Source: Phallusia mammillata
Taxonomy: Eukaryota
Length of the DNA stretch: 64,000 bases
Assembly: GCA_965637545.1 (NCBI GenBank)
Contig: OZ281497.1
Location: 28,272,001-28,336,000 of the forward strand
Direction: 5' to 3'
Shown: positions 1 through 44,102 of the stretch, in pieces
Layout of the letters: each line of letters opens with the position of its first letter
How positions within the stretch are numbered: position 1 is the stretch's first letter
The notes under the pieces: model-generated
Database searches by the model: none
Seen by the model: the letters and a program-made list of their open reading frames with translations, nothing else
Told to the model about the DNA's origin: nothing
Translations under genes and position numbers: made by a program

Positions 1-709
1 GAACAGAAACATCGCTTCCATCATTCCACTGAAACTTGGTTGTGTTTCCGATTCTCTTCGCGCCAATGTACAGCGAAAAGGGCTTATCTGGATTTAACAA
101 AAAGTAAAACGTATTTTTTTGCATGCTTCCGATGTATGAGTACTAGTTTGAGAAAAAACAGGATCCTTTAACTCAAAAATAAAGGTACATATAAAAATAA
201 TTATGCTATTATCGTGGTACATTAATGATGTCCAATATCGTCTAATGATAGCGAGAAAGGCTTATCTAGATTCAACAACTTGTACAATTTTTTATACATG
301 CCCGCATCGAAAACGCACTGATTAATGTGAAAAATATGAAACGTTATTATTGTGGATCGCCTATGTGAGATATTGATATTAGTTCATGATGGCATAAAAA
401 CGAAAACGAATATAGCGTTTCCGATTAAGAAAAGATAATTGAATTTATGGTTCAATTTTTACTAAACAACATCAAACTATAGTTCACAATTATCACCTGT
501 CAAGTTAATATATGTCTTCAAAAACTCAAATATTGCCGTAGTTTTGACGTTAGCTACTTCGGCTTGCAATGCAGAACATCCCATTTCAGCTTCAGCATAT
601 GAAGTGACTGGAGTCATTTCGATGGAATATTGAAATCCATTGAAGTTATGCCAAGTTCTTCCTTTTGAAACAAATAGCACAAGATATATATCACAGCAAA
701 AACCTCCAT
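1..709 (-). pseudogene. L1: C-type lectin receptor paralogue, 5' part only (exon 1 497-709; exon 2 <1-87), frameshifted in the signal peptide
   Basis: Exon 1 encodes GRTWHNFNGFQYSIEMTPVTSYAEAEMGCSALQAEVANVKT with donor ACAG|GTGATA at 496. Exon 2 (ccag|AT AAG) reads DKPFSLYIGAKRIGNTTKFQWNDGSDVSV to the window edge. The family-position ATG (709) is 47 nt from the GRTW codons versus 51 nt in L12, so it is out of frame. Confidence 0.8.
222..265 (-). other. Duplicated exon-2 acceptor and first codons inside L1 intron 1 (pseudo-exon)
   Basis: gcgagaaaggcttatctagattcaacaa nearly copies the true acceptor region gcgaaaagggcttatctggatttaacaa. It reads DKPFSL then diverges to TAA at 222-224. Confidence 0.6.
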
Positions 710-1077
710 GTTTGCCTTTCACGAAAATCTTGTTTACATAAAAAAATAGCAACACTTTTACAGCCCATGGCAATCTTGTGTAAAAGGCAACGTCCATTTA
801 ACTAAGACACAAAGTTTAATCTTGAAGATATTTCCAGTCTGTTCAGGAAAGTACTTCCTTTTCTTTAACGCAGCAACGAAGACACGGAAATTATTGGCAT
901 GACGTCATGTAACTTTCGTTTCTTATATTTTGCATCAATCACGCTAACTGTGCGTGAAAAGATGAAAACCGCGTTTATACAGCTTTGCTCCGTGTTTGGA
1001 AATGCGTGTCCGTATTTTAAACAAAGTAATAACATTTCGAGAACAGTTGCTAATTTCACTTTAAGTCAATTTCTCTA

Positions 1078-2532
1078 CTAAAAGTGCAAATGTATTTTAT
1101 ACTTACCTTGTGTTGCATGGATAACTGGACCACGTTTGGAAATAATGGTTATAGTGGAAACGGTTAGACTGGTTAAATCTGTAGATGGTAACGATAAAGT
1201 AGTGGTTGGTTTGGTGGATCGTAAAACAGTTCGGATGGTTGACTTTGTTTCTGGTAAAAAAAACGGTTAATGCTGTATGTTCGGTAGATGTGGTTAGTTT
1301 GGGAGACGGCAACACCGTTGAGACGGTGGTTGATGTCAATATGGTCGTGGCGCGACAAAACAAATTACTATGATACTTTTTACACATTTCAAAGTCATGT
1401 TATTTGTAGTTTAACTGTGGCCTGTTATAGATTTTCGGGAGAGTCATATTTCAAGGTACTAGTTAATACGTTTTTAGTGTCGATAGATCACAGCAGTGTG
1501 CACTGCCTGCTTCTTATGATCTATTGGCTTGATATGACGAATTGTTAGTTTTTGAAAAAAAAAATAATATTTGATTTGGCATGAATTAAAAATAAACTAC
1601 ATATTGCCCTTCAGTATAATCTTTTCATTTCTGTTTTTATGAGATATTGGTAGTTTTCTTACATGCGAAAATTGCTCATTTGAAAGTCAAAGAATGAATA
1701 ACTTTATGTTTTATGGAGATGAGAACTGTCGCTATAAAGTCAGATCAGTCATTCGAAATAAGACTGCGGACTGTGTAATTCCAATTATCAAGTACGATCT
1801 TTTTTTCGTCACCGGGTAGTGCCTACCTGCTATTTTTTCACAAATGTATCTCGCGCTGTGTCTTGTACATCGTACTTCATAAAAATTGTAAGATCTTATT
1901 CGAATAGATTCGTAATGATGACCCATGGTCATGCATCTTTCGTAGATGTTTTTTGATTGTCCTTTTTTCCACATACTGCTTGGAACTGCAACTTCGCTTC
2001 CATCATTCCATTGAAATCTCCCGTTGTCTTTTAGTATTCTCGCACCGATATAAAGCGAATTAGGGAAATCTGATGAAAGCAAAACAAGTGACGAGTTGTC
2101 TATGAGGTATTTGCCACCTCGGTGATAATAAAGTATGAATTTTGTGTCCTCGTATTATCGGTGCGTCAAAACTATCCGTTGTTTTCATACGAAATTTTTC
2201 ATTTACAAATTAAGGCACGTTTGGCTATGGGTAAAAACTACCATTTGAGTTACAGTTTGCTAACCAAACACAAGCTTTCATTTTAGAGGCATGAAACAAT
2301 CTAATAAATTATCACCTGTCAAGTTGATATGTGTTTTCAAAAAGTTAAAAATGGCCTCATTTTTGACGTTGGCTACATTAGCTTGCAGCAGGGAACAATT
2401 TCCCTCTGCTTCAGCATATGAATTGACTGGAGACATTTCGATGGAATATTGAGATCCATTGAATTCATGCCAAGTTCGTGCTTCAGTAGAAGCAGATAAA
2501 CACAGCAGACACAACAAAAGTAACAACGCCAT
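1078..2532 (-). CDS. L2: C-type lectin with mucin stalk and no TM exon found (exons 2316-2532, 1827-2069, 1107-1250); secreted or decaying
   Basis: Signal peptide MALLLLLCLLCLSASTEA, CTLD with 4 Cys and YIGA/WNDG. Exons of 217 and 243 nt have GT-AG phase-1 boundaries. The Thr-rich exon ends CAAG|GTAAGT at 1106, and read-through gives GKYKIHLHF* at 1078. No hydrophobic exon is seen before L1. Confidence 0.7.
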
Positions 2533-3701: not shown

Positions 3702-6700
3702 TTAATTGGGATCAAATGTTATGTAATCAGGACGTCGATCTTGGCTGACACAATAGGGATTGACGGCATCAGCTTGTAATTGTGATGTGGTTGGCTGCAC
3801 AGAGTTGTTGACATAGGTTGGTGGGTTGTTGTGTATTTCTTCACTTAGTTGAATTCCATCTGTTTAAAACAATTCTGCAATCAATAGTATTTTATACCTG
3901 AATAAAAAAGATTACATGTAAGGTGGTAAACAAACTGATAGAGAAAAAGAAATAACGGTCGTATTGGGACTTATCTAAACATTTCTAAATAGGGACAAAT
4001 TGTAAAATACACTTGATCAATTAAAAATATGCATTGGGGACCTTGTTCATAGTTGATGCAATAAGGACTGATGTCATCAGCTTGTTGCTGTTCCACTGAA
4101 ACTTGTAAGGAATTGTTTGGTGGGTTCGTGTGAATTTCTATGATCCGACGATTTTCAGCTTTTAAAACAAACGCAGTTTAAAACACTTCGACGAAAGAAT
4201 GTCTCAATATAGTAACGTTTAACCAAAAACTAAAAGCGGTTCATATTTGCATTGATTTCAAGCAGGAGTTGTGCAACTTTCAACACTGATGGGCAAAATG
4301 CAATTACCAAAACTAGATCGCGAGCCACACCTTTACACAAATATGTGTTCACTACAGCACACGGACATACTGTGTTAACAACAACCAGTAATATTTGCAA
4401 GTGAGTCCAACCGCATGGTTGAGTCGCAGAATAAACCCAGACGCAATAGTCCGGTAAGAAAAAATATTGAATTGTTCTAGGGACCACTTTAGTGGACACA
4501 CTTCATTTGAAATCAAAACGTATCCGAGGATCACTTCATTAAACAGGCGCATTAGATCTGCGGGCCGAATCCGTTTTGCACACCCCCAATATGGAAAAAA
4601 TTTGCAACTTGGTTTTGTTTTCGTTTTACTTTACTGTGTAATTCTGGTTTAAACAAGAGCACTCACTCATGTTAACGTATTCAGGTTCATCTGTATTTCT
4701 TGCTGACATCTCACTCCTACAAAACAAAAAATCTAGTTTAATCACATAATTAAATGGCACATGGTGTTTTAATGAGCCCAACATTTATGCTAAACTAAGA
4801 TTATGCTTCCAACATATAAAAACTTCAATCAGATTAACTTTTGCTGAACATTTGTACATCATGGATAGGTTTGCAGTCGTATACAGTGGATCTTACCTCT
4901 TTTTGCGTTTCCACCAAGTCATAATGACTATGCAGATTATGAAAACCAAGCTTCCGCATATTGTTGAAGATATGATGGTGATGTTCATGTTAACCTTTGC
5001 TCCAACTGTAGAACCTAAACACGTTTTTCACCATAAAAATTATGCCCTTTTTTAAAATACAAAAGATTTATTATTATCAGGAGCAAAAACATATTTTCAT
5101 TAAAAGCTATTTGCAGGATAAAAATCTGTGAAATGTTTTTTTGCACTTAGTGCTAAGAGGAATTAACCTAAAAACCTGAGATTGTTAAAACGTATTGAAG
5201 GTAAGTATTAAAACTTTTGGAGTAAGTATAACTTAACCATGTTAAGCATTTTGTCAATGACGCAAATCCGGCTTCCTCGTCTGCAAAATTTTATGAACAA
5301 TGTCTTATTATAAGTTTGGAACCCTTAGTTTAAAATCTCGACATGATTAATATGCCAGGTTAAGTATTAGACCATGCGAAAAAAACGAAAAAAACACATC
5401 TTTTTTGTAAATGGAAAGTATACGTTTCTCTCACGTAATGTTTACAATGGTCTCTTGAGCTACCAAACAACATAAGTGTCATGATCCAATACATTGCATT
5501 GTTTACCAGATCAACATTCTGGATTTCTCCACATTAAACGTCACCTGAAAGTGTGTTGTGGATTACAAGATCTGACTCGGTGGTTGGGACTGACTCCGTG
5601 ACTTTAATAGTTGCCTTGGGTGTGGTGGTTTGTTTGCGTGTGGTCTTAGTTGGTTTGGTTGTTTTGGTTGTGGTGGTTGGTTTAGTTTTGGTGATTGGTT
5701 TAGTGGTGGTGGTTGGTTTGGTTGTGGTGGTTGTTTTGGTTGTGGTGGTTGGTTTAGTTTTGGTGATTGGTTTAGTGATGGTGGTTGGTTTGGTTGTGCT
5801 GTTTGGTTTGGTGGTGGTGGTTGGGGTGGTTGGTTTGGTTGTGGTCGTTGTTGGAGTGGTCGTTTTGGTTGTGGTGGTTGGTTTAGTTGTGGTGGTTGGT
5901 TTAGTCGCGGTGGTTGGTTTAGGTTTGTCTCCGGGAGTAGTTCTTGTTTTCGTGGTGGTTTCTTGAACGACAAAATATTCTTATTTTAGTTTTTCTCACG
6001 GAAATATTATAATGAGCATATTTAATTACTTTACTCGAAATTTACTTCAGATAAATACAATGAGGTTAAAATAGTGTAAAATACATTCCTTAACAACTGT
6101 TATATAGATTTTCTGCTTAATATCATCTTACTTGTCTTCCAAGCTCCACATAACTACTTAAGGATTTAATGCCCTGGTGTGTATACTTTGCAACAAGAAC
6201 CGACCAACTTCAAAAATTGTGCATGCGTTTAGATGCTGAATGGCAGTGAACGTTAAAATGTTTCAATGTATGTTTAATGTATCGTGACCGTCTCTAGGTA
6301 ACATAAACCTTAAAATAAATGCGTTCTTCGCCCATTCCAGGTAAATTATTGGTCTATTCAGGTCCGGACTAGCGAAGGTTTCCAGCATGTCTATATAACT
6401 TTAGATTCTCCAGATCATAGTACTTACAAAAGCAACATTTTAATAATTGAAACTTGTTTTTACTTTTAACCGAGTTTTCTCACCGGTTTTCTTCTCACAA
6501 ATATATCTCGAATATCCTGTACATTTTACGTCATACAATTTGTAAGATGAGACAAGAAGCAAAGCCCAACCCATTGTGGCGCAATCTTCTTTTCCACCAT
6601 AATTATTTGGCTGCCTAGCTCCCCACAACTTTTTATAAACTCCAACATCATTTCCATCATTCCACTGAAACTTTGTTGTACCTTTGATTCTTCTCGCACC

Positions 6701-7259
6701 AATGTAAAGAGAGTGGGGATAATCTTAAAAAAGTGAAATTCTTTATTTGTTTTTTGCAGTAAGTTTGATAATTATATTCTTGTAACTTTTGAGTACATTA
6801 TCAAAACACATGTAATACTCTATTTCACGGAGTTTTCTAGATGATTTATCTTCAAACGGTTTGATCACATCGTGCAAGGATTTAGGTTTGTAATGTTGTT
6901 GCATAAAAACCACCTGAATTGTTGTTAAGGTCGCGCATACGGTTTCACTTAATGACAAAATAAGACGTTAAGGGTGAAAATGGAAAATAAGTTAAAAGGA
7001 CACAATTCTATTGACGATTCAAAATGCGTGCGAAATTATCACCTGTCAAGTTGATATGTGACTTCAAAAACTCAAAGATTTCCATAGTTTTGACGTTTGC
7101 TACAATAGCTTGCAGCGCGGAACAATTCCTCTCTGCTTCAGCATATGAATTGACTGGAGTCATTTCGATGGAATATTGAAATCCATTGTAGTCATGCCAA
7201 GTTCTCCCGTCAGCAAAAACAGATAAACACAATATAAACAACAAAGCTAACAACTTCAT
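3702..7259 (-). CDS. L3: intact type I membrane C-type lectin/mucin receptor with YVNM tail (exons 7043-7259, 6484-6723, 5545-5961, 4897-5014, 4667-4716, optional 4042-4158, 3702-3859)
   Basis: All exons are open with AG/GT ends and matching phases. CTLD: QPNN..EDC..LYD..YIC. 139-codon KPTTTT stalk. TM ITIISSTICGSLVFIICIVIMTWW-KRKKR. Tail SEMSARNTDEPEYVNM...PPTYVNN...NPYCV...PDYITFDPN*. Confidence 0.88.
5600..5925 (-). repeat. Coding 18-bp tandem repeat (K-P-T-T-T-T) in the L3 mucin exon
   Basis: About 15-18 degenerate AAACCAACCACCACAACT units (not exactly counted). They explain the overlapping Val-rich, Gly-rich and Pro/Gln-rich ORFs in the track. Confidence 0.9.
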
Positions 7260-10119: not shown

Positions 10120-10880
10120 GTATAAAGCAGAAATATTTTGCACAATGACGAAAGCACGGCATATCTTAAATCTGGGACGAGTTTCATCCATTTTAATACA
10201 ATTTCTTTTTCGTTTCCTTGTCAGGTTTCCTTTAATCCGCAAGAAAAAAATTGGTTCAATTTTGCTTTGCCTATTCCATTAAAACTATTCAGTACCGTTT
10301 AATCTCGTTAAACCGATGTAAAAAGAAGAAACCAAACCTAAAAACGTTTTGTTTGATTAAATCATCCTCTAGTAGGAACGAAGGCTTTGCAACAAAGAGT
10401 TCAATTTTCGCACATGTGTAAACTGCTTTCTCTGATTAAAACACAAAACTAAAAATCTTTCAAGGTGGTTCAAATAGCAATTAAACCGCATGAAACGTAA
10501 ACAGACTGTCACAAAATGCTGCCACACACGAGAGTTTTCTCAAAAAAAGCAGGTCTCAAACTTTTAACAAAGAAGCAAGCGGGACCTGACATGTGTTCAA
10601 AACTAGTGGTGGGATTCAGCCGGTTCGCACCGGTTCTATAGAACCTTATAACGAAATTTTATGAGATCAGCGAACTGGTTAAGATTAATAATAGACTTTT
10701 TGTAACAGAACCGTCTGAAACATATGACTTTTGTGATTTATGACAAAAAAATTGAATTCCACCACTGTTCAAAACTAAGTAGTAATGTATCAAAGCCGAA
10801 AAACATCGATATAGCTCGGCAAACATTGTCACAAAACTAAACCAGAAGTATCGGAACAATTGAGAGTGGCAGATAAGTGT
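10120..10880 (-). pseudogene. L4: decayed CTLD paralogue of a divergent subfamily (exon-2 relic ~10120-10337; exon-1 relic ~10750-10880)
   Basis: ttttag|GT then GLVSSFYIGLTRLNGTE*F*WN...NCIKMDETRPRFK..PCFRHCAKYFC with stops and frameshifts. Alignable by eye to 27888-28114 and 37556-37807. Confidence 0.75.
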
Positions 10881-11511: not shown

Positions 11512-13084
11512 TTAGACCTTATGAGTAGCAAAGCTCCGATGACCATGAACTGCCAAAACAAAACTTGAATCTTTCCGAAATGTAAACCTGTAAGTCTGCA
11601 ATCTTTTTTTTTATGTCAAAATGATAGAATTTTTTTTAAATTTTCTTCAGTAACGTTTTGCATTGTTTATAGATATACCAAGTAGGGATTTGTTAATTTT
11701 CGTTGTTTCGCATAGAGTAAGCCGATAAAGTAAGCTAAACTTGCGGTTTATAATTTTTATGTGTTTGCTACGTTTACATTTTTTCCCATTACGCAAAATA
11801 ATTCTGAAACTTTGTATTGTGGTTTAATTGTTAAACAACGCACTTACCTGTACAAGTGCTCGCTGTAACTCCAGTCAGAATTTTATCTCCTAGAAGTAAT
11901 TGTTCATTAATCTTTGTGTTTCGACCATTAAAGCAGTTTATGATGTACACACAGATTTCACAAATCAACCTTAAACATTTGGATACAGACAACTTCAATT
12001 TGCTAAAACGGTCATATAACAACTTCAACTCAGCTGAAACGGCCATGTAGTTTTGCCTTCGGATTAAGCTAAAAGTTCCTTACCTGCGTCTACGTTTCTG
12101 AGCGGTTATAAATACAATAACTTTGCATGCAATCATAATAATAAAGGCAGTGCACGCTGCTGCTGTAAGCATGACCACGATCCTGTGAACTTTTTCACCC
12201 GCGGTTAAACCTTCAAACAAATTGCGCACATCTCCATTTTTTCAAAACATGGATTTTGGGTAAAAGGGTTAGGCCATACGGGTTCTTACGTACCTTGTAT
12301 TACGTACCTTGTATTAGCGGAAAGTTTGGTGGATGTTAAGATTGGGGTAGGGGTTGACTTAGATGAGTAAGTTTTGTGGATGGTAATTTAATGGTAGTAG
12401 TTATGGTTTAATAGTGGGTAGTTTGGTGGACGGATGGATGCTGGTAGTAATTGGTTTGATGGATGTTTGTATGATGGTAGAAGTTGTAGCGGGTAGTTTG
12501 GCTGTAGCTCTAACGTAAAAAGGATTAACTCGGTTGATTTAAAACGAAAACACCAATCTGTAAAAACAATGTGTCCAAACTGTTTGCATGGAAAGCAAAC
12601 TTAACTTTTAGTGGTCGTGTTTTCACTGAATTACTTTTGAGCCTACATTTTAAAGTCACAAAATCTAATGTAAGTCTGAAGCATGTTATTACCTATACGA
12701 CATTCCTGTCTTTTGTCTTTTTTAAGTAAATAAGGTTTTCTCACCTGGATTACCCTTTTGGCAGATGTATCCTGCAGCGTGCGTTCTACAACTCTTATCG
12801 AACCATTTGAAAATTTTCGTACGGCGTCGTTTCATGAAACGCAGAAATTAGTTTTTATAATTGCAAATAAAACTTCCATACCGAATGTATAAAAAGTTGT
12901 AGATTTCCTTAATTTTGACGTCAACTACATTAGCTTGCAATGACGAACATCCCATCTCAACCTCAACATATGTAGTAACTGGATTCATTTCGACGGAATA
13001 TTGAAATCCATTGAAGTTATGCCAATTTCGTGCCTTAGCAGAAACAGATGAGGACAACACAAACAACAAAACTAACAACACCAT
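11512..13084 (-). pseudogene. L5: TM-lysine-type lectin receptor, disrupted (exon 1 ~12880-13084 beside an exon-2 remnant 12745-~12845; stalk ~12292-12507; TM 12084-12210; 11848-11889; 11512-11549)
   Basis: The YIGA-WNDG-QPNN half of the CTLD is missing and KWFDKSCRTHAAGYICQK follows exon 1 within ~50 nt. In-frame TAA in the stalk. The linker exon is 42 nt versus 41 nt in L9, giving AGA TAA. The TM exon is open: IVVMLTAAACTAFIIMIACKVIVFITAQKRRRR. Confidence 0.82.
12286..12313. repeat. 14-bp tandem duplication that duplicates the L5 stalk-exon splice donor
   Basis: ttacgtaccttgta occurs twice, giving CAAG|GTACGT twice on the minus strand 14 nt apart. Confidence 0.85.
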
Positions 13085-29334: not shown

Positions 29335-31397
29335 TTAGACCTTGTGAGTTACAAAGCTAGGATGACTATGAACTGCAAAACAAAAGTGTAAATCTCTTTA
29401 AAATGTAAACTTGTAGGTCTGAGATCTTTTACTTTTATGTCAAAGTAATAGGAACTTTTGATATTTTGTTTAGTAACGCTTTGTATTTTAAAGTTTACAG
29501 ATATACTAAGCAATAACAGGGATTTGTCGGCTTTCATTGTTTCGCATAAAGTGTTCCAGTGAAATAGCCTAAACTTAAGGTTTATAATTTATTTGTGTTT
29601 GCTACGTTTAGTTTTAATCTCATGACACAACATTTTTGCATATTATTTATGCTGTAGGTTAGTTGCTAATCAACGCAATTACCTGTACGAGTGTTTCCTG
29701 TATATCCCGTCCAAATTTTGTTCCTAGAAATAATTTTTGGTTAACAGTATGTATGTGTGTATGTCGACTAATTTGCTTAATGTAAAATTTTTGCAAATAT
29801 ATGTATAATTTCATTTTAATTGTATTGATCTATTAAAAGCAGATTAGGATGAACAAACAGAATTACAACCTGAGAAAAATCAATCTTTTACAGATCGGTT
29901 TCATGCAGGCAGTTTTCAAATGCTAGATATAATGCCCTGCAGTTTTGCCTTCACATTGAGCTAAAAGCTTCGTACCTGCGTCTACGTTTCTGAGCGGTGA
30001 TGAATACAATCACTTTGCATGTTATTATGATAATGAAAGCAGTGCACGCTGATACTACAAGCATGATGACGATCCCGTGAACTTTTTTCCCAGCGTCTGA
30101 ACCTTTAAACCAATTGCAAACAACAGAAAATTTGCTGAAAACAATAAAGGACTGTGTAATTTTTCCTACCTTGCACTGTGGCGGCAGTAGTCCACATGCC
30201 TATTGTAGTGGAAAGTGTGTAACTGGTTGCGTTGATCGACTTGGTGTGCGCTGTTTTGCTGATTTTATTGGATGATAACACGGTGCTAGCGAATGAGTTG
30301 GTAGTGATTGGTTTAGTAGATGGTAAAATGGTGGTTGTAGTTGGTTTGGCAATTGGCAAATTGGTGGTTGCGACAGGTTTGGTAAATATAGCAGCAGTAG
30401 TAAATCTGGTAGTGGGAATTTTACTGGATAGCGATTTCGTTGTGTTGATTGGTTTAGTGGTAATAACATTAGTGGGTTGTAATTTTGCGTTTGTGGATGA
30501 TTTACTAGAGGTCGCTTTGATTGATGATAATATGGTCGAAGTGGTTAGTATGGTTGGTACTGTAACATAAAACAGCCAATCGTCAACTTTATTTGCTTGA
30601 AACGAAAACCATACCTTTACTTAGTGTGAAGTATGTCATTATCCACTACACATTTTGGTCATGAGATTTTTTAATAAACAAAGTTTGCTCACGTGGAATA
30701 AGCTTTTGGCAAATGTATCCTGCACTTGATGAAGTGCAATTCGTGTCAAACCATTTGAAACGCTTAAACTCTCTTTCATAAAATATTAAAACACAATCTT
30801 CTTTTCCGCCATAGTTATTTGGTTGGCCATGACTCCAGACGTCTGCTGGAACTGACACATCGCTTCCATCATTCCATTGAAACTTATTTGTGTTTCCGAT
30901 TCGTTTTGCACCAATGTACAGCCAGTCGAAATGTTCTAAAATTTTAGCGTCAGTGGTTGCTGGTGATCTGTGAAAGCTATGCTATATTTACATGTTGGTA
31001 GAACGCCTGAACACTATGTTTGAAAAAAAAGGAGAAAAGAAGTTGCTATCGGGAAAATTTGTTTTAAGGAAACTAAAAGGTTTGATGCCAATCGTAGAAA
31101 ACAAGAATAATACACAGAATGTACAAATTAACCAAGGGAAATGCAACTTTCGTTCAAATAAACTCGAGACTAAATTTTACCTCCATCGCACAAGAGTTAT
31201 TTCAAAAAATTGTTTATATCCACAGTTTTGATGTTAGCTACATTAGCTCGCAAAGCAGAACAACTCTTCTCTGCTTCATGATATGAAGAGACTGAAGTCA
31301 TTTTGATGGAATATTGAAATTCATCGAAGTTATGCCAAGTTTGTCCTTTAGCAGAAACAGATAAATACAACATGTACAACAAAACTAACCTCAACAT
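29335..31397 (-). pseudogene. L9: complete TM-lysine-type lectin receptor with a single nonsense codon (exons 31181-31397, 30693-30935, 30170-30559, 29976-30102, 29683-29723, 29335-29372)
   Basis: All six exons have family lengths and GT-AG ends. The only lesion seen is TAA at 31197-31199 in exon 1. TM IVIMLVVSACTAFIIIITCKVIVFITA-QKRRRR. Tail NKIWTGYTGNTRTVHSHPSFVTHKV*. Confidence 0.85.
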
Positions 31398-33289: not shown

Positions 33290-33535
33290 TTGTTTATTTG
33301 TCACGTCGTAGTTTATCGTAGGGTGAATCCGATTCGTCGTTAACCCCATGTCTATTATCATAGATATTAGTTGGATTGCTGCCGCTTGCAAATTGATTGT
33401 GGACTTCCACATGTTGAGATAGTTGCAAAGTTTCGTAACTGACTTTATTCAATTGATTGTGATCGCATTTTAGAACATGTCATTGTTCTCCATTGTCGTT
33501 AACCTTTGTAGATTGTTTCAACTTTCTGACCTTCC
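33290..33535 (-). pseudogene. Orphan copy of the L12-type ITIM tail exon
   Basis: VRKLKQSTKVNDNGEQ*HV..VSYETLQLSQHVEV..NIYDNR..DSPYDKLRRDK* aligns with the L12 tail and has one internal TGA. Confidence 0.8.
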
Positions 33536-33939
33536 TGGCAAAAGCGTTTAACCAAAATCAGGTTATTTTTTGTCATATTAAATAAGCTTTTATTGAATTT
33601 AAGTAATACTGTACAAGTTACTCGAGTTGTCAAACAGGACTTTTTGCTAACGTTTTGTCTGCCAGAACCTATCACAAAGCAGCAAACTTCCAGCTTCCAT
33701 GGAAGCTAAAAAGTCGTCGGTGATCATTTCGGTTAATGTTTTATTTCAGACATTTGTCCAATTTTGCCAGAAAACATAAATGGCCAAGCAACAATGCGAA
33801 CCAAGATTGGAGATGCTGTAATGGCCAGGCGACACAACACTGTACTTATTTATGAAATAGCAGTATCCATAAAGCTATAAAGGCACATACCTCCTTCATA
33901 CGATAGGTTGTTGTAATGATGTAAGTTGTTAAATTGAGC

Positions 33940-35757
33940 CTACACAGTTTCATGATGGCAGTAATATGCCTGTAAATACGAACCTTGTGTGACATCACAT
34001 GATTTGACTTCATCAGCTGATTGTTTTTGTGATGCGGTTGGTCGTAGGGAGACAAACATTGTTGGATTGTTGTGTGTTTCTGTGATTTGACGATTTCCAA
34101 CTATTAAAAAACAAGATTGTTGACTGACATTTGTTAGCTGTAAGTGAAAATTTATCTTGCTTAAAATCGGAACACCTACTGGTATAGACGTGGACACTCT
34201 CATTTGCATATCTGTCTGATGCTGCATTTCTACAAAAGTAAAGTTGAAATAGTTGACAATAATAGTGGTATCAGCTCTATATTAGTATTTTGTAAACAAG
34301 GTCTTGGATCAAGAGTAAAATTTACATTTTTCTTCCTCATTTACACTGATTTTATTGTTGACTTATTCGATTGGGAGCTTTAACTTATTCCATGTACCAG
34401 CTCGGATTGTTCTTCCACTTGCACTCTTAACATATTTTAAAATTAGGGTCTGAACTCTTAAATACCAAAGCATGCAGTTGAAAACAAAACTTTACCTTCT
34501 TTTACGTTCCAGCAACGTAACATTTGCTGTAGCAAAGCAGATTATGACGAAGGCAATTACTCCGCACACAGAGATGATTATTTTGTCAAACATTGTTGTA
34601 CCTAATAAACCCAATTTTGATTATACTACCATAAGTATGAACTGGCCGGTTTCTTACCTTTTCTTGTGTGATTAGTTGATATGCTTGTGGTGGCAGTCGA
34701 ATCAATAAATGGTAATGTGGTGTTTATAATTGCTTCGATTGATGATAATTCGATAGATGGTATAGTTGTAGCCGTTGGTTTGATAGAAGATAATATAGTT
34801 TTAGCAGTTGGTTTGGTAGAAGATAATATAGTTTTAGCAGTTGGTTTGGTAGCTTGTGAAATGGTTGTAGTGGTTGGTTTAGTAAACGTTAATATAGTAG
34901 TACTTTTTGACTTGGTAAATGGTGTTACTGTGGTATTGTCTGGTTTGGTGGTTGCTGTAACAAACATATACGGTTACAGTCAGGTATTTTTAGCAAGCAT
35001 CAATCAGTTGCAAGCTCCTATCAAAACTTTTTTTATTCAAATAAATAACATTTTTTCACCAAAAATAAGCTTTTGGCAAATGTAACCGGCACTGTATGTT
35101 GTACAACCCATACCAAACCATTTGTAACACATAAACTACGGAGTGGTTACATACAACATGACAACACAATTCTCTTGTTCGCGGTAGTTATTTAGTTGCG
35201 AAATTCCCCACGCATTAGCTGAAACTAAAACATCGCTTCCGTCATTCCATTGAAACTGATCAGTGTTTCCAATTCTGTGTGCACCAATATACACTTAGTA
35301 GAAGGGTTCTATAAAATGACATTTGAGATTTAATTTTGTTTGTTATATTTCCTACACCGAAGAGGATGTGGCACAATCGGGTATTGATAGTTTGTGAAAA
35401 AACTAGTTATATATTTGTTAAACGGCCCAAAACAAAGATTTAGAATAATAAGTAAGCTGTAAGCAGATACGATAGTTTCGAGAAAAAACACAGTCTTTAT
35501 TAACGGCGCCGATCGATTCTTTTTCAAAGATATCGGAACTTATGTTTTGCCGCCAATCATAGAAAACAATAGTATTAAATACGTACGACAAAAATCTATT
35601 AAGGTAAATAAACTGAAATTCCTAGTTGCTCGGACAAAATGTCTTTTTAAAAAGTTTTTGATTTCGATAGTTTTGACATTAGCCACATTAGCTTGCAACG
35701 CAGAACATTTCATCTCTGCTTTAGCATATGAGGAGACTGGAGTCATTTCGATGGAAT
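33940..35757 (-). pseudogene. L10: lectin receptor pseudogene (partial exon 1 ~35620-35757; 35060-35308; 34658-34954; 34496-34601; ~34387-34427; 33940-34100)
   Basis: The signal-peptide half of exon 1 is absent and its donor is not GT. Exon 2 has two in-frame stops (FY*VYIGAHR; TTP*FM). Stalk, TM (IIISVCGVIAFVIICFATANVTLL-ERKRR) and an L3-like tail exon (ETHNNP..ADEV) are open. Confidence 0.85.
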
Positions 35758-36270
35758 AACTACAAATGTCATATTAGCATAATATTTAGCAACTCTAAAC
35801 ACTCAAAAAGGTATCTAAAAAAGAAGAATGTAAATTCTTGACTCCGGCTAAACATTGTTTGCTAACATATATCTAGGAAAGCTGCTTAAAGTACTATATA
35901 AAGTGGTTTAGATTATTTTCTGCAAAAAATAATCACCCAGAACTATTTGCAGAAACTCCAGACCAGGAAAACTTAAAACCTGATTCAAAATCCCAACATT
36001 GAAAAAAAAAGTGCTCACTTCGTAAATCAGTTCTAGGACTGTCTAGCTTATTTATGGCGACTTATAGTTTGGACAGTTCACTTTTTATTAATAGATTATC
36101 TAGGGGTGATATATTTGTGTCCACAGTACATGGCATTTAATTTGAATAACATTTCAATATTCTTGAATTCACTTAATGTATGACGGTAGCTTGCACTTTA
36201 ATCAACGGAAAATACCGATACAAAAAGTACAAAAACAGAATGCGATCTACTTACCTTACAACATTACAAG

Positions 36271-36385: not shown

Positions 36386-36414
36386 AAAATCTGTACCAAC
36401 TACAACATTACCAA

Positions 36415-37555: not shown

Positions 37556-38260
37556 TTGCACTATCAGATTTTGTTTGACAAAACAATCGCGCCAAATGTC
37601 GATAGCACGGAATGTTTTTAAATCTGAAACGAGTTTCATCCATTTTCACCCAAAATTTTCTTTAACCCATTTTTTTACCTTTTTTTGCCAGGTTACTCTT
37701 CAAGCCTTATTGAAAAGTAAATGTTTCCAATTTGCCTCCCTCATGTCACTGAAACTGTTCAGTACCGTTTTTCCTCTTAGCACCGATGTAAAAGGAAGAA
37801 GCCAAACCTAGAAAAATGTTTTGTTTGCAAATCATGATTAATATAACAAAGTCCTAAAATACTGAAGTAAGACTTTACTACAAAAAGACTGACATTAAGC
37901 ACGCTTTTAAACTGCTTTGATGGTTCAAAACACAAAACTAAAAAATCTTTCAAGCTGGTTTTGATATTAAGTCAACCTCTAAAAACGTTAAACAAGAACT
38001 AGGCTTCTGCCAAATACTAACGATTTCCAAATAAACTTGCGAAGGAAGAAGGCTTTAAAGTTTCCAACTAAGAAAAAAGAGCATCACATAAAACGAGGCG
38101 TTCACTGATTGTTGATACTCCAGGGACAGCACTGGAAGTAATTAGCAGCAAAATTTTGTGTCAAAGTGCTTGCCCAAGAATGCAACACGTAACAACTTCA
38201 TTAAACTTGTTGCGCGACACAAAGTGCGCTTTAGGTAGAACACTTCAACACCAAATGGAA
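37556..38260 (-). pseudogene. L11: third decayed copy of the L4/L8 CTLD subfamily (exon-2 relic 37556-37807)
   Basis: ctag|GT then GLASSFYIGAKRKNGTEQFQ*HEGGKLE...MDETRFRFKNIPCYRHLARLFCQ ending at a GTAAGT donor. A weak exon-1 relic lies near 38130-38260. Confidence 0.75.
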
Positions 38261-38669: not shown

Positions 38670-39138
38670 AAGCGATATATAATGGGAAAGCATTTGACCC
38701 TATGTTCGAAGACAATACATTGTGAAAACAACAAGATCAGTACAAAAATGCACCGATGTAGCGCTGTTTATTTGCACGAGTTCAAATATCGAAAGACAAC
38801 ACCACAGAAAAGGCGAGATAGGACAGGTTGCAAACAGAAAAAGGCACGTGACGTATTGTGCGGTTCGGTTACGCATGGCTAAATAACGCAGTTGTGAAAA
38901 ACGCCTAGTTGTCGCCACACCGGTATAATAAAAAACACCGGGTTCCACACTCGTTCTGAATCGTAAAAAACAGACTGCAATGCACTGAAGTGAAACAACT
39001 GTTACTTTGACCCAAAATATACAAGCAAATACGGCGAAAACTTTTCAAAAATACATGGAAGTTAGTTACTACAAATGTACATAATAGTTCCACAAAAAAT
39101 CTTAATCTACAGATTTGAGTCAAACTTCATTTTTTTGT

Positions 39139-41253
39139 TCATTTGTGACGTCGTAATTCGTCATAGGCTGAATCCGATTCGTCATTAGGCCCCTGTCTGT
39201 TATCATAGATGTTAGATGGATTGCTGTCACTTGCAAATGGATCGTGGATTTCCACATGTTGAGATAGTTGCAAAGTGTCGTAACTGACTTCATTTAATTG
39301 ATTGTGATCGTATTTTCGAACATGTGATTGTTGTCCATTGTCGTGAACCTTTGTTGATCCTTTCGACTTTCTGACCTGAGCATAGACATCGCTGCTTCCC
39401 GCAACTGGCTGTGCAACATCGTCAAAGTGTTCTTGTCGAGGTTGCTGGATTTCGTCATAATGGTTGTCATGGATTTGGTGAAGTGAAAGCCGTTGTGTTG
39501 AATGGTTGGCGAAACTGTTTTCTTCAATTTGAGGAATGTTGTACGTTTCTTCGGGCTCAAAATTGTCACCTGCTTTGACAACATTAATTTTATCTTGTTT
39601 AATCATTTTGGTTCCGTAAACTGAAAAATCACTTTTTCAAATTAATAATGAGGAATTTGAGTAAAAAAGAACTACGTCAGGAAAGATCACTGACATGTTA
39701 ACACAAATAATGATTGTAACTAATATCAGAATATTACATATTTTCCTACCTCCTGTATTGTATTCAGCCACCACTACTTCCTTTAGGGGTTTGTTTCCCC
39801 TGTGAAAGTTAAAGGCAAATTACTTCCCGTAAGACGTTTAAAGACAAAGATGCATCAGCGCACGTAACAATTGTGAGTCAGAAAGTTTTGAAATCTTAAA
39901 CATTTATTTAAAATCTTCAACTTATATTTGTTATTGTACTACTTGTTTGCTAACGCTGTTTGTTCTTTCAAAATATTTTTCAATTACGTAAAAAACGTTG
40001 TGTTGTTACCTTTTCTTCTTGCGTGACGTAACAAAGAAAATGACGATACAGATTATGACTAATATGACGCATCCGCTTATTGCTGAAGCAATAATTGCTG
40101 TGTTGCCATTCGCTACTGCTGTAAAATCAGTAAATAAATTTAATTCTGGTTAGCCCGATAGATTTGGTTAAATCGTGTTACATTTGGTTGAAGCAAACCT
40201 TAAAAAAACAATGTTTGTTTACTCATACCCTGTGAATACGTGAATATCTGTAAATACTAGTTTTGATTTATTTTTGATCTGACAATGCTTTTTAAGTTTA
40301 TTTCTGCTTGCCTTGTGTTGTGTTGATGGTAACCGAACTTCTAGAAGCAAAGGTAAAAGTGGACAGGGGTAAAATGGTTGAGTGAGTGGATGGAAACGTA
40401 GAGGGACTGGTTAACTTGGTAGATGGTAATGATGTCGCGTCTGTCATCAAAACAAATTTATATTGTTCTCAGGATAAACCAAACCACTTTAATTTCGTCA
40501 TTTGTAAAACACTTTCTGATTGTAGCTTACTATATCTTTATGATAGGTTTATTTTGCTGTAAACAACTCAGAAAATATAGGTTTAGAGCTTTGGAGAAGT
40601 GTCATTCCAGCATTTTTCCACAACCTACCATGACCGTCGTTTGTTTACCTGAGACATTTTTCCGGCAAATGTATCTCGAATTGTAACTTGTGCAGTCTAC
40701 ATCATAAAGTTTGTGAGAAGGAACAAGATAAAATCCCATTGTTATGCAATCCTCAGTGCCCCTTACATTATTTGGTTGATTATAGCCCCACATGGAGCTT
40801 GGAACTGCAACTTCTGTTCCATCATTCCATTTAAACTTGTAAGCACCGACTCTTTTCGCGCCGATATACAGCGAGTAAGGGACATCTGATGGAAACAAAG
40901 TCAATGGTTCATTTATTTAAGAACTTGAAAAACAAGAGCTCTTTCTTGTCTGTGATATTTTGTTTAAGGCGCCAAATTTTAATAAATTAGCCAAAAGATA
41001 TTCCTATTTTTGCATTTTTGGACAAAAAATTGCCACCTGTAAGATTAGTTAGTTTTGTTAAAAATTCAAAGACTTTTTGAGTTTTAACGTATGTTAATTT
41101 AGCTTGCAGCGCAGAACATCTCATCTCTGCTTCAGCATATGAATTGACTGGAGTCATCTCGATGGAATATTGAAATCCATTGTATTTATGCCAAGTTCGT
41201 CCTTCAGCAGAAGCAGATAACCATGACACAAACATGACAACTATCAACTCCAT
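39139..41253 (-). CDS. L12: intact type I C-type lectin/mucin receptor with two canonical ITIMs (exons 41037-41253, 40649-40885, 40312-40440, 40010-40118, 39750-39799, 39139-39572)
   Basis: All exons are open and phase-consistent; intron 3 has a GC donor (CAAG|GCAAGC). CTLD: QPNN..EDC..LYDVDC..YIC. TM AIIASAISGCVILVIICIVIFFV-TSRKKKR. Tail has VSYDTL (39271-39288) and SAYDEL (39154-39171), plus YDEI, YAQV and YDN. Confidence 0.88.
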
Positions 41254-41844
41254 ATTTGTCCTGAAAGAAAAGATGAATTTGGTTGTACCACATGCTGTAC
41301 CATAGCTTTTCCAACAATTAAATAGTAAGGTTTTTACCCTTTAATTCGTAATCACGACAAACTATCAATGCCTATTGTAATCTAAACTTTATTTCGTTGT
41401 TACGTCTTTATCACAATTATAAGATGACATGTATGTATTAATGTGTTAATGCGCTTCAAAATAATCTTTTTAGGTATTAACATGCTACCTACAGTTTACC
41501 AAATACAAGACACCTCCCATACTACTGATAACAGACAATGTATGCACGACTAAGATTATAAAGGACCGATGAACGCATTTTACGCATACGCGGAAACTCT
41601 ATTGAGGTGACGTCATACCAATATCCTTGCCCCGTATGACAGGATTAATTGCTTTGCATCAAAATCAGAACTATGTTTGCTGCCTAAGTTTTGTTTAGGT
41701 TGTTGTTCGAGTACGTTTTACTTTTTGTAGTCGTTTTATCAGTTTGCTTGACGTCGAAATTATGTGCTATTTGTTATAAGAAGTTGTATATTTATTTTGG
41801 CATAATTTTCACTTTTATTTCTGTTTGTAACTTTTTTGTTGCGT

Positions 41845-44102
41845 CACAATTCATCGTAGGCTGAATCCGGTTTAGGGTCGCTTCTATTATCATAGATATT
41901 GGTTGGATTGCTGCCGCTAGCAGAATGAGCTTATACATCCACATTTTTAGATACAAGTGTCGTAACTGACTTCATACAATTGCTTGTGATCGTATTTTCC
42001 AACATGTGATTGTCGTGGACCTTTGTTGATTGTTTCAAATCCTGGATCTAAGAAATAAGTTTTTCTAACATTTGTATGAGAAATGTATTGATAACTTTAA
42101 AGTGTCAATCCCACAATAGTACAAATAACTGATCATTATAATAAGGTTTTTCGGCAAGCAACGAGAAAATTCCGGCTAAAACTCAGCTATTGTTTGGTCC
42201 ACCAAAATTATTAACTGGTTGTTTTATAATGCAATTAAAATGCCTGAAAAAAACGAACTAATAAAAATAAACTCTCATGGGTATACATAATATGTGCAGA
42301 ACAAATCTAACATATGACAAACTGACCAAAAGAAAATCTTGATGATGATATGCAAACATATACATAGTACATACATCTTAGTTGTTGTCAAAACTGTTTT
42401 GCATAGAAATGTGAGACATAAAATGTTTCAGTGTATATGTTACAAAATTATTTCGGTAGATTTGGGAATTCGAGCAAAAGATCTTCAAGTGGCAATATTA
42501 AATTCCCATCGACCTCTTATGCATGATTCTATATCTTGCACCATAACTGCCCCCCTAATTCAGAAACCGCCCAAACCCGTCCAGAACGGCCCACCACTAA
42601 GCCAGAGAAGGACTTTTGAAGCCTTCGATAAAACAAAAAAAACATTTGCACGAAACAACTCGATCACAAGGATCACAAGCGGAGTTCACTATTGGGCGCT
42701 TTGCTTAGATAAAACGACAAAAAATATTTGCATAATACAACTCGTATTTCCTAATTCAACCAGTTAATTTAAAAAGTTCCACATAATTTAAAGTAAACGC
42801 CAGTAAAACACGACAAAAAGCACATCCGGTTAACGATATGAACAATCAAGTGTAAATTAATGACAGGAAAGAGGAGATCATAAAGAAACGAAGAAAAAGC
42901 CACGATTACAGTGTAAAACAAATAAGTAAATAGTGTGTGATAAAAAAGGTAAATGGCCAAAAAGTGAAAATATGAGTGACAACGCAAACCAATAAAACTC
43001 AAGAATTACAGAGTAAAAAATGTTGTTGGTAAAGATACACAATATATATCATTACAAACGAAGCGATTATAAGTACAAGTAGGTGTGTGAAAATAAAGTA
43101 ATCGAATAGCAAATAATTAACAAAAGGCGACAGTGCTAAATATTAGTAAAAGCCAAAAAAAGCAACAAATGTAAAAAGTAATCAAATATAGCTGCCATTT
43201 GTAATTAATTGTACTTTTGAAGACTTTTAATATGCTTGACAGTCAGTCCTTCAGATACTATTGATCTCACACCTGTATCTAAGTTATTTCCTTAATCCAA
43301 ACTCGGATAAAAGTATTCAAAAATGTATGCGACCCTAAATCACACACTACCACATCGACAGTTACTTATTTGACAAGAGCTTTCTGATCTATTAGCCTGC
43401 AACCTGGAAGCTTTCCGTCCAAGCTAATCGAACCAAAAGTTTCTGAAATCTAAATTGCAGCAAGCATGCACTGAGTACCAACTATAAAATAAGAATGACA
43501 CGCAGTTCCAAAGCACGATGTGCGCCTTAAGAAATACTATTGTCAGTAACAGGCATGTTGCCATCAGCCACTTGTGCTATGACACACACAACAAATTAGA
43601 ACCAACGCACACACGCAAAAAATGCGACAGTAGGTAAACATTATCGATGTTGAACAGGTTAAAATGTCGTAAACGGTTGTATTACTCATTTTCCTAAGGT
43701 TTTGTAAATTAATAACATATATTGCTAACATTTCACCTGGTGGACTTTCAGTTTGAGAAATAAAAAGCCTGTTTAAAGGATTGTTTACTTTATAAACTAA
43801 AGTACCTATACTGCAGAAATGTAAAATATTGACAAAACTTACTTTTTATTGCATGTATTGTCATCACGATTTCACTAAACCAAGTTCGTGCTTTTTCAGT
43901 TGACTTCAAGCACTTGCAGCTAAATTTGTAGCAAACTGAAAACTGCTGGTTTATCTTTCGCGTCACCGCTGTTTGCAACACTGTTTTCCTAATTACTTCG
44001 GCGAAACTGCCTTGCGTTGCGAACTGAAGGCACAAGAACATATCGACAAAATCATATTCGCTTCATAAAGCTGCGACCGATTGTGTAGTTGGTACTCAGT
44101 AT
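41845..44102 (-). pseudogene. 3' remnant of a further paralogue (tail-exon relic ~41845-42047; possible exons 43737-43768 and 43997-44102)
   Basis: The tail relic clearly matches L12 (QSHVGKYDHKQLYEVSYDT; frameshifted NIYDNR..DSAYDEL). The two upstream candidate exons have the right phases (1-2, 2-1) but weak sequence similarity. Confidence 0.55.

What the first reader, a model, noticed from the sequence alone, without database searches (positions are those of the whole stretch)
1..44102. Paired activating/inhibitory C-type lectin receptor complex: one ectodomain plan, four signalling outputs
Seen: at least 12 tandem paralogues share exon lengths and phases but end differently. L12 has two canonical ITIMs, L7 has a YxxL-x10-YxxL pair, L3 has YVNM, and L5/L6/L9 have a TM Lys with a tail of about 30 aa or less. 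Known: this mix of inhibitory, activating and adaptor-coupled members plus many pseudogenes characterises vertebrate paired-receptor clusters (Ly49/NKG2, KIR, LILR, Siglec), whose lectin members are type II proteins; these are type I with a mucin stalk. Inference: an independently evolved invertebrate self/non-self or pathogen-sensing receptor complex. From memory, Botryllus fester co-receptors are a comparable ITIM/hemITAM family; homology was not tested.
Basis: partly seen in the sequence, partly recalled or inferred. Interest (0 to 1): 0.92.

Follow-up and report, generated by a model that had tools for sequence, protein, structure and literature searches.

The report
Sea-squirt lectin receptor gene cluster
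A sea-squirt genome carries a fast-turning-over tandem cluster of cell-surface lectin receptor genes. Their interchangeable tail exons carry inhibitory-type, activating-type and co-stimulatory-type tyrosine motifs, so it resembles an immune receptor complex, but only three to five copies are intact and no immune role is shown.

Summary
On the minus strand of 1-44102 there are 12 loci of one type I C-type-lectin receptor family plus one tail relic.

- **Intact six-exon genes (three):** C/L3, F/L7 and I/L12, with shared exon lengths and phases.
- **Motifs present as stated:** I has VSYDTL and SAYDEL. F has YGQL-x10-YNVL. C has YVNM in a 50-nt exon. D, E and G have a Lys after a conserved TM Cys.
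- **Damage:** D and H are dead, G has one stop codon, A is frameshifted in its signal peptide, B lacks TM and tail exons, and three loci are exon-2 relics. E is open but ends three residues after the membrane segment.

The ITIM tail recurs in a public Phallusia mammillata protein (all six compared tyrosines kept). RNA contigs of a close paralogue show the predicted TM-linker-tail splicing. No transcript of the window's own genes was seen.

The family is not unique. Ciona has unstudied relatives with the same CTLD intron, and the overall build is layilin-like. Strict pairing fails, because Lys-type and ITIM-type lectin domains are only about 45-53% identical. The Lys also sits near the cytosolic face.

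My reading: a birth-and-death, exon-shuffling receptor cluster with probable phosphotyrosine signalling and a plausible but unproven immune role.

The parts
39139..41253 (-). Exons: 41253-41037, 40885-40649, 40440-40312 (GC donor), 40118-40010 (TM), 39799-39750 (50-nt linker), and 39569 or 39620 to 39139 (tail with VSYDTL, SAYDEL, DVYAQV, NIYDNR).
   Evidence: full ORF with consistent splice sites. RNA contigs of a 90-95% identical paralogue or allele join the TM exon to about 64 nt and then to the tail from 39570; tail is 76% identical to P0003 and all six compared Tyr are kept.
21750..25146 (-). Copy F (L7), an intact six-exon gene of 448 aa with an EPN-type CTLD. Exons: 25146-24933, 24374-24132, 23802-23518 (GC donor), 23014-22891, 22587-22538, 22180-21750. 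The tail ends YGQL-x10-YNVL.
   Evidence: Pfam PF00059 on exon 2. Alignment to Mincle shows EPN kept and WND changed to FRD.
3702..7259 (-). Copy C (L3), an intact six-exon gene of 396 aa. Exons: 7259-7043, 6723-6484, 5961-5545 (Thr/Pro mucin stalk), 5005-4897, 4716-4667 (EPEYVNM), 3859-3702. A duplicated alternative tail exon lies at 4158-3971.
   Evidence: Pfam PF00059. The start of the stalk is 72% identical in nucleotides to F's stalk.
16181..19706 (-). Copy E (L6), an open four-exon ORF of 328 aa. Exons: 19706-19490, 18554-18309, 16798-16388, 16293-16181. The TM segment has Cys-Lys and the protein ends RHR-stop, because the 3' end is frameshifted relative to G and D.
   Evidence: Pfam PF00059.
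29951..31397 (-). Copy G (L9), Lys-type. Exons: 31397-31181, 30935-30693, 30559-30170, 30102-29951. It is open except for one in-frame TAA at 31199-31197. The tail reads QKRRRRYEAFSSM.
12068..13039 (-). Copy D (L5), a dead Lys-type gene. Exon 1 is at 13039-12890 and only the last third of exon 2 remains (12838-12746). The stalk is frameshifted, and the TM exon 12229-12083 is followed by a stop.
   Evidence: It lies in a segmental duplicate of the G unit (8556-13084 matches 25486-31397).
33297..35773 (-). Copy H (L10), a pseudogene. It has no start codon or signal peptide, two stops in exon 2, and an ITIM-type tail relic at 33533-33297 (VSYETL, SPYDKL) with a stop.
   Evidence: The tail relic is 87% identical in nucleotides to I's tail.
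1107..2532 (-). Copy B (L2). Exons 1-3 are open (2532-2316, 2069-1827, 1250-1107) but there is no TM or tail exon before copy A. QPN has degenerated to QSK. It is either a soluble form or a pseudogene.
1..797 (-). Copy A (L1). Exon 1 ends at 497, and the homologous ATG at 709 is out of frame because of a 1-nt deletion. Exon 2 starts near 100 and runs off the window. It is the closest window match to P0003 (about 90% aa).
10162..10338 (-). L4: a degenerate F-type exon-2 relic with stops.
27850..28050 (-). L8: a degenerate F-type exon-2 relic, the duplicate of L4.
   Evidence: ORF; 10144-10547 matches 27927-28344.
37566..37808 (-). L11: a degenerate F-type exon-2 relic.
41835..42069 (-). An orphan ITIM-type tail relic (VSYDT..., NIYDN, SAYDEL) with deletions and a stop.

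Best explanation
This is a birth-and-death tandem cluster of an ascidian family of type I membrane receptors. Each gene encodes a signal peptide, one short-form C-type lectin domain split over two exons, a Thr/Pro-rich mucin stalk exon, a TM exon, a 50-nt linker exon and one long tail exon.

The CTLD-2 and stalk exons are symmetrical phase-1 cassettes. Exons have been exchanged or homogenised between paralogues, so similar ectodomain plans are joined to different cytoplasmic modules.

Shown:
- The gene models, the motifs and the pseudogene load.
- The mosaic history of the exons.
- Conservation of the ITIM tail in a paralogue.
- Splicing of that tail type in RNA.

Inferred:
- The three intact long-tailed genes signal through tyrosine phosphorylation after ligand binding by the lectin domain. 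Copy I would recruit SHP-type phosphatases through its two ITIMs. Copy F would recruit a Syk-type kinase through its spaced YxxL pair. Copy C would recruit PI3K/Grb2 through YVNM.
- The short-tailed Cys-Lys genes are a separate, decaying sub-lineage whose coupling is unknown.
- The cluster most likely serves cell or microbe recognition. It is immune-like, but it is not a matched activating/inhibitory pair system.
For: - Gene models with canonical splice sites and full ORFs for C, F and I and for E.
- PF00059 scores above the curated cutoff on exon 2 of C, E, F and G and on P0003. The nearest solved CTLDs are Mincle, CLEC4D, DCIR, langerin and the MRC family.
- Motifs are present and individually uncommon in shuffled tails.
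- The I tail and the P0003 tail are 76% identical and all six compared Tyr are kept. The same ITIM positions recur in the H and 42-kb relics.
- RNA contigs from two studies (X8, X12) join the TM exon, about 64 nt and the tail exon exactly as modelled, and carry the P0003-like F-to-V change.
- Mosaic history: exon 1 dS is 0.2-0.5 against exon 2 dS of 1-2.3 between the same copies. C's stalk matches F's while C's CTLD matches I's.
- A segmental duplication links 8.5-13.1 kb with 25.5-31.4 kb.
- Ciona has SYK (accession listed in PMC13344425).
Against: - No transcript of C, F or I themselves was seen. Exons 1-3 of I have no RNA contig at 90% or more.
- The tissues of the RNA runs are unknown.
- YxxL/V/I motifs also fit AP-2 sorting signals, as was proposed for layilin (PMC2132847).
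- The Asn of the WND Ca2+/sugar motif is replaced in every window copy, so sugar binding is uncertain.
- Pfam did not score I's exon 2 on its own.
- Two of the three intact genes depend on a GC donor before the TM exon. Reading through that donor meets a stop within 3-9 codons.
- The motif p-values are not corrected for about 18 tests.
Confidence: 0.5

Rival explanations
1. One reading: a true paired activating/inhibitory receptor complex. ITIM members would be opposed by short-tailed members whose TM Lys recruits an ITAM or YxNM adaptor, for self/non-self or pathogen sensing.
For: - ITIM, ITAM-like and YxNM tails plus three Cys-Lys short-tailed members lie in one cluster.
- The Lys replaces Ile/Leu at a position that is inside the hydrophobic segment of the long-tailed paralogues.
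- Pseudogene turnover and segmental duplication are typical of such clusters.
- Botryllus uses ITIM/hemITAM co-receptors in allorecognition (PMC12582321).
Against: - Lys-type and ITIM-type CTLDs are only 45-53% identical and fall in separate clades.
- D is dead, G has a stop and E is truncated.
- 20-22 hydrophobic residues precede the Lys, so it may lie at the cytosolic interface, as Cys-Lys does in the Ciona relatives.
- No acidic-TM adaptor was sought or is known to me in ascidians.
Confidence: 0.17
2. A layilin-like adhesion or endocytic receptor family. The lectin domain would bind matrix or glycan ligands, and the tail tyrosines would serve as talin/PTB or AP-2 (YxxPhi) sites rather than as immunoreceptor motifs.
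For: - Language-model features place P0003 nearest to layilin clusters, at 0.89-0.91.
- The build is the same: type I, one N-terminal CTLD, a TM segment and a tail of 120-190 aa.
- Ciona relatives carry V[DA]N[EVA]IY near the C-terminus. This resembles layilin's talin-binding ESGFVTNDIY, and layilin also has YNVI and YDNM (PMC2132847).
- I's best-conserved tail stretch is NP(S/T)NIYDN.
Against: - The layilin motif register (N-x-I-Y preceded by V) is not met in C, F or I.
- The atlas score is at the level where 4-10% of shuffled proteins also hit, and only 148 of 256 features are shared.
- A layilin role would not predict the copy-number turnover or the diversification of tail types.
- By sequence the nearest solved CTLDs are myeloid CLEC4 receptors.
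Confidence: 0.23
3. A largely decaying gene cluster with no current receptor function. On this view the motifs are chance features of Tyr-rich disordered tails.
For: - Seven or eight of the 12 loci are damaged or truncated.
- No RNA was seen for the window's own genes.
- Each motif has an uncorrected p of 0.008-0.03.
Against: - Three six-exon ORFs of 390-450 aa remain open with all splice sites intact.
- dN/dS is 0.13-0.5 in exon 2.
- The Tyr motifs are conserved between I and the public Phallusia protein P0003.
Confidence: 0.1

Closest known systems
Ciona intestinalis type I CTLD proteins with automatic names only (XP_002129946.1 'CLEC4G-like' = P0151, plus P0153, P0154, P0156-P0158), and Phallusia mammillata CAB3231619.1 (P0003)
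   Same: - Signal peptide, then a W(H/Y)-x-x-G...Y start and a single CTLD.
- Intron at the same place inside the CTLD, after '...N(L/V)T'.
- Thr-rich stalk, TM segment with a conserved Cys, and a Tyr-bearing tail.
- Small tandem groups in Ciona.
- P0003 has the same two-ITIM tail.
   Different: - Ciona members keep canonical EPN and WND, have short tails of 40-100 aa, and carry a layilin-like V-x-N-x-IY motif.
- None of the retrieved Ciona proteins shows the two-ITIM tail, the ITAM-like tail or the YxNM exon.
- The window's QPN-type genes form their own clade.
Layilin (vertebrate CTLD group VIII, talin-binding hyaluronan receptor)
   Same: Type I orientation, one N-terminal CTLD, a TM segment, and a long unstructured tail with YxxPhi motifs including YDN. 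It is the nearest hit by language-model features.
   Different: Layilin is a single-copy gene with no mucin stalk exon. It has the LH2/LH3 talin motif ESGFVTNDIY (PMC2132847), which the window genes lack, and it shows no ITIM/ITAM-like diversification.
Vertebrate NK-complex and myeloid lectin receptors (Ly49, NKG2/CD94, DCIR, Dectin-1, NKG2D-DAP10)
   Same: - Clustered, rapidly duplicating lectin-domain receptors.
- ITIM tails (DCIR, Ly49 inhibitory members).
- YxxL-based activation.
- YxNM output (DAP10).
- A charged TM residue in short-tailed members.
- The CTLD sequence is nearest to the CLEC4 family.
   Different: - The vertebrate receptors are type II proteins with N-terminal tails, whereas these are type I with a mucin stalk.
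- Vertebrate activating/inhibitory pairs share near-identical ectodomains. Here identity is 45-53%.
- Here the motifs sit in the receptor's own tail, not in an adaptor.
Botryllus schlosseri fester co-receptors (FcoR; PMC12582321)
   Same: An ascidian type I receptor family in polymorphic clusters. Tails carry ITIM, hemITAM or other Tyr motifs that can be swapped by alternative exons. Copy I carries one DVYAQV, which fits the FcoR 'core-2' pattern [A/D]VYxxV.
   Different: - FcoR ectodomains are immunoglobulin-superfamily domains, not lectin domains.
- Core-2 motifs occur in pairs 29-33 residues apart.
- YxNM was reported absent from FcoR.
- No partner gene family is seen here.

Membership tests
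C-type lectin-like domain (Pfam PF00059) | Profile match above the curated cutoff, and the four canonical Cys | tested here: met
   Exon 2 alone of C, E, F and G scores 37.7-44.6 bits against a cutoff of 22.6, and P0003 scores 43.5 bits. I's exon 2 alone did not score. The four Cys are at the canonical positions in all open copies.
Ca2+-dependent sugar-binding CTLD | EPN or QPD tripeptide, a downstream Glu/Asn, and the WND motif (Asn and Asp as Ca2+ ligands) | tested here: inconclusive
   EPN is present in F and QPN in C, E, G and I, with QSK in B. The E/D-x-C motif is kept. The Asn of WND is replaced in every copy (FRD, LYD, WFD, WYD) while the Asp is kept. Ciona relatives keep WND.
Paired activating/inhibitory receptor cluster (KIR, Ly49, NKG2, LILR type) | Tandem cluster with gene gain, gene loss and pseudogenes | tested here: met
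   There are 12 loci, of which 7-8 are damaged, and one segmental duplication. Variation between haplotypes was not tested.
Paired activating/inhibitory receptor cluster | Inhibitory members with [SIVL]xYxx[IVL] in a long tail | tested here: met
   I has VSYDTL and SAYDEL. Both are conserved in P0003, which has VSYDTL and SAYDEI. SH2 binding is not testable here.
Paired activating/inhibitory receptor cluster | Activating members with a short tail and a basic residue inside the TM helix | tested here: inconclusive
   The Lys is conserved in D, E and G after the TM Cys. However, 20-22 hydrophobic residues precede it, D and G are disabled and E is truncated.
Paired activating/inhibitory receptor cluster | Activating and inhibitory counterparts with near-identical ectodomains | tested here: not met
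   G against I is 53% identical in exon 1 and 45% in exon 2. E against I is 51% and 44%. E and G form a separate clade with 95/94 support.
Paired activating/inhibitory receptor cluster | A signalling adaptor with an acidic TM residue (DAP12, DAP10 or FcR-gamma type) | not tested
   None is encoded in the window, and the rest of the genome was not available. A literature search found no ascidian DAP12.
Canonical ITAM | YxxL/I, 6-8 residues, YxxL/I | tested here: not met
   F has YGQL, ten residues, then YNVL. The spacing is outside 6-8 but inside the looser 6-12 range, so it is ITAM-like only.
Layilin | Type I protein with a single N-terminal CTLD, a TM segment and a long tail | tested here: met
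   Gene models. Layilin clusters are the nearest hits in the atlas at 0.89-0.91.
Layilin | Talin-binding LH2/LH3 motif (ESGFVTNDIY) | tested here: not met
   No [VIL]xNxIY in the tails of P0003 (which scanned only the retrieved proteins) or of C, F and I (by eye on the models). It is present as V[DA]N[EVA]IY in Ciona relatives. The motif itself was read from PMC2132847.
Layilin | Orthology by phylogeny with vertebrate layilin and chondrolectin | not tested
Botryllus FcoR | Immunoglobulin-superfamily ectodomain encoded next to a fester-family partner gene | tested here: not met
   The ectodomain is a CTLD plus a mucin stalk, and no Ig or CCP gene lies in 1-44 kb.

The most novel reading that the evidence does not exclude
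Ascidians of the Phallusia lineage have built, from a layilin-like type I lectin receptor, an immune-type receptor complex by exon shuffling. It would have inhibitory (double ITIM), Syk-type (spaced YxxL pair), PI3K/Grb2-type (YxNM) and adaptor-coupled (TM Lys) members. The ligand-binding exon would diversify while exon 1, the TM exon and the tail exon are kept alike across a much larger genome-wide family. That would make it a lectin-based, type I counterpart of the NK-complex receptors and of the Botryllus FcoR genes.
Probability: 0.25. Interest if true: 0.8.

Novelty: new variant of a known kind. Interest (0 to 1): 0.55.

Why it matters
If the tails really signal, this would be a second kind of tunicate receptor cluster, lectin-based rather than immunoglobulin-based, that mixes inhibitory and activating tyrosine motifs. 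[quoted passage not shown] Such a cluster would bear on how often NK-like integration of opposing signals has arisen.

It would also show a simple genomic route to it: symmetrical phase-1 exons and a separate 50-nt motif exon that can be swapped between paralogues.

In addition it gives testable candidates (copies C, F, I and the P0003 gene) for SHP, Syk and PI3K coupling in an invertebrate chordate used as an experimental embryology model.

If the tails turn out to be sorting or talin-binding signals, the cluster is an expanded layilin-like adhesion family and of modest interest.

Tried and rejected
- **Homology searches.** The word-based search with P0003 found only itself. With I's tail exon it found nothing, because of the tool's length window and word limits. 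Only an alignment query reached the Ciona relatives.
- **Exact look-ups.** P0003, P0151 and I's tail ORF are not on record in public assemblies. The source species therefore could not be confirmed. The best clue is about 90% identity of copy A to a Phallusia mammillata protein.
- **Reads.** The single reads call covered only 39000-44100, so F, C, E and the stop in G were not checked against reads or RNA.
- **Positive selection.** Pairwise Nei-Gojobori values are below 1 and dS is saturated in exon 2, so nothing can be said about the binding loops.
- **Other ORFs.** Pfam found nothing in the other long ORFs, including the plus-strand ORF in E's intron 1 that looks GIY-YIG-like by eye.
- **RNA genes.** Rfam and tRNA scans of the window were empty.
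- **Literature.** Searches for a described ascidian type I lectin receptor with ITIM found none. The known tunicate lectin receptors there are the type II CD94-like genes.
- **hemITAM.** I considered SAYDEL as a hemITAM, but the three acidic residues are not in register.
- **Tree error.** A first tree used wrong coordinates for B's exon 2, so B's placement is meaningless. The other rows are unaffected.

Full report
**Where and what.** The window is AT-rich (about 35% GC over 1-44 kb). Earlier agents placed this genome among the sea squirts. All the genes discussed lie on the minus strand.

tblastn with exon peptides finds nine loci that have both halves of a C-type lectin domain. More sensitive searches add three degenerate exon-2 relics and an orphan tail relic.

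**Gene models.** Reading the sequence of copy I and enumerating splice sites by phase gives complete six-exon ORFs for I, F and C.
- Exon 1 (214-217 nt) encodes the signal peptide and the first half of the CTLD.
- Exon 2 (237-243 nt) encodes the second half.
- Exon 3 (129-417 nt) is a Thr/Pro-rich stalk.
- Exon 4 (109-124 nt) is the TM segment ending in a basic cluster.
- Exon 5 is exactly 50 nt in all three genes.
- Exon 6 is the tail.
- The phases are 1, 1, 1, 2, 1 throughout, so exons 2 and 3 are symmetrical cassettes.

I and F use a GC donor after the stalk exon. Reading through that donor meets a stop within 3-9 codons in I, F, C, E and B.

Exon 2 of C, E, F and G matches Pfam Lectin_C above its cutoff. 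The nearest solved domains are Mincle, CLEC4D, DCIR, langerin and the mannose-receptor family.

The sugar/Ca2+ motif is EPN in F and QPN in C, E, G and I. The Asn of WND is replaced in every copy, so classical sugar binding is uncertain.

**The four endings.**
- I's tail carries VSYDTL and SAYDEL, plus DVYAQV and NIYDNR.
- F ends YGQL, ten residues, YNVL.
- C's 50-nt exon encodes EPEYVNM, and its tail adds PTYVNN.
- D, E and G have Lys immediately after a Cys that is conserved in all TM exons, where I, C and F have Ile or Leu. Their tails are 3-17 residues.

Shuffling each tail gives p of about 0.03, 0.008 and 0.012 for the three motif findings. These are suggestive only, given about 18 implicit tests.

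**Intactness.**
- C, F and I are intact.
- E is an open 328-codon ORF, but its 3' end is frameshifted relative to G and D, so it stops three residues after the hydrophobic segment.
- G is open except for one TAA in exon 1.
- D has lost most of exon 2, and its stalk is frameshifted.
- H lacks a start codon and has several stops.
- A has a 1-nt deletion that puts the homologous ATG out of frame, and it runs off the window.
- B has three good exons but no TM or tail exon.

That is largely right, although E remains open.

**History.**
- A block at 8.5-13.1 kb (L4 relic plus D) is colinear with 25.5-31.4 kb (L8 relic plus G) at 66-83% nucleotide identity.
- Exon 1 is far more alike between copies than exon 2 (dS 0.2-0.5 against 1-2.3).
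- C combines an I-like CTLD with an F-like stalk.
- Together these show exchange or homogenisation of single exons, which agrees with note s1-385384.
- A CTLD tree puts the QPN-type copies and P0003 in one clade (95/98), E and G in a subclade (95/94), and F outside on a long branch. B's row in that tree was mis-built and should be ignored.

**Relatives and expression.** A full-library search with I's exon 2 found one close relative, P0003. This is Phallusia mammillata CAB3231619.1, automatically named 'CLEC4G-like'.
- P0003 has the same build without a stalk exon. It is about 90% identical to copy A's exons and 76% to I's tail. It keeps all six compared tail tyrosines, including both ITIMs.
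- RNA-type contigs from two studies (X8, X12) lie on I's TM and tail exons at 90-95% identity. They join them through about 64 letters, which fits 15 nt of exon 4 plus the 50-nt exon and an acceptor at 39570/39569, the one P0003 uses. They also carry the P0003-like Phe-to-Val change.
- So this tail type is transcribed and spliced as modelled, but in a paralogue or allele. No RNA lay on I's exons 1-3, and F, C and E were not examined.
- An alignment query then found seven further Ciona proteins (nine in all with P0003 and P0077) with the same N-terminal pattern, stalk, TM segment and short Tyr tails. The intron sits at the same place in the CTLD. One locus holds three CTLD genes in tandem.
- The family is therefore older than this lineage and already sits, unstudied, in public annotations.

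**What it most likely is.** I favour a birth-and-death cluster of type I lectin receptors whose modular exons give different phosphotyrosine outputs, most plausibly for recognition at the cell surface.

The strict paired-receptor reading is weakened in three ways:
- Lys-type and ITIM-type ectodomains are only 45-53% identical.
- The Lys-type genes are decaying.
- The Lys follows 20-22 hydrophobic residues and could sit at the cytosolic face. In the Ciona relatives Cys-Lys marks the membrane boundary.

A layilin-like adhesion or endocytic role is a serious rival:
- Language-model features put P0003 nearest to layilin, a weak score.
- Ciona relatives carry V[DA]N[EVA]IY, which resembles layilin's talin-binding ESGFVTNDIY (PMC2132847).
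- However, the window genes lack that motif.

**Literature.** Searches found no described ascidian type I lectin receptor with ITIMs. The nearest functional parallel is the Botryllus FcoR family, which is immunoglobulin-based (PMC12582321).

**Verdict.** It is a new variant of a known kind, and my interest score is 0.55. I did not test that note.

Noticed in passing
window 39000-44100 (read laying, run X1): In the DNA run, base depth is about 150 over introns and intergenic DNA. The bins with I's exon 1 (52,655), TM exon (17,968) and tail exon (4,600-15,000) are 30-350 times deeper and are carried by dozens of variant contigs. Exon 2 and the stalk exon stay at base depth. This may mean many more paralogues elsewhere share 90% or more identity in exon 1, the TM exon and the tail exon but not in the ligand-binding exon. 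The tool warns that this depth is not a copy number.
   Followed up: no
window 3971-4158 and 3702-3859 (-): Copy C has two similar candidate tail exons in tandem, both starting near '...EIH(N/T)NPP...' and both in phase with the 50-nt exon. They could be alternative endings or a decayed duplicate.
   Followed up: partly
window 40310-40311, 23516-23517 (-): I and F use GC donors after the stalk exon. In I, F, C, E and B, read-through of that intron meets a stop within 3-9 codons, so intron retention would give soluble lectin-stalk proteins. P0003 lacks the stalk exon altogether, which fits skipping of a symmetrical exon.
   Followed up: partly
window 39569-39620 (-): There are two in-frame acceptors for I's tail exon, 51 nt apart. 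The downstream one matches P0003, F's exon length (431 nt) and the RNA contigs.
   Followed up: yes
Ciona proteins P0151, P0154, P0156, P0158; loci L001, L002: The Ciona relatives carry a layilin-like V[DA]N[EVA]IY motif at or near the C-terminus and keep canonical EPN/WND. L002 holds three CTLD genes in tandem next to an Ig-domain gene.
   Followed up: partly
window 18627-18962 (+): An ORF of 111 aa inside intron 1 of copy E looks by eye like a GIY-YIG nuclease remnant of a mobile element. Pfam gave no hit.
   Followed up: partly
window 57400-59200: A GC-rich (up to 48%) degenerate tandem array with a period of about 46 nt, open in several frames on both strands. Pfam gave no match.
   Followed up: partly
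window 46900-51342: Tandemly duplicated blocks of about 1.2 kb (46900-48168 matches 48976-50178 at 79%, and 48165-48976 matches 50581-51342 at 70%). Their content is unknown.
   Followed up: no
Styela clava P0020/P0021/P0152: These are large type I proteins with repeated CTLD units, each followed by a Cys/Trp-rich segment (TSP1-like by eye, not tested), then a mucin region and a tail with many xxYA(V/T)V motifs, several of which fit the ITIM pattern. They suggest that Tyr-motif lectin receptors are widespread in ascidians.
   Followed up: no
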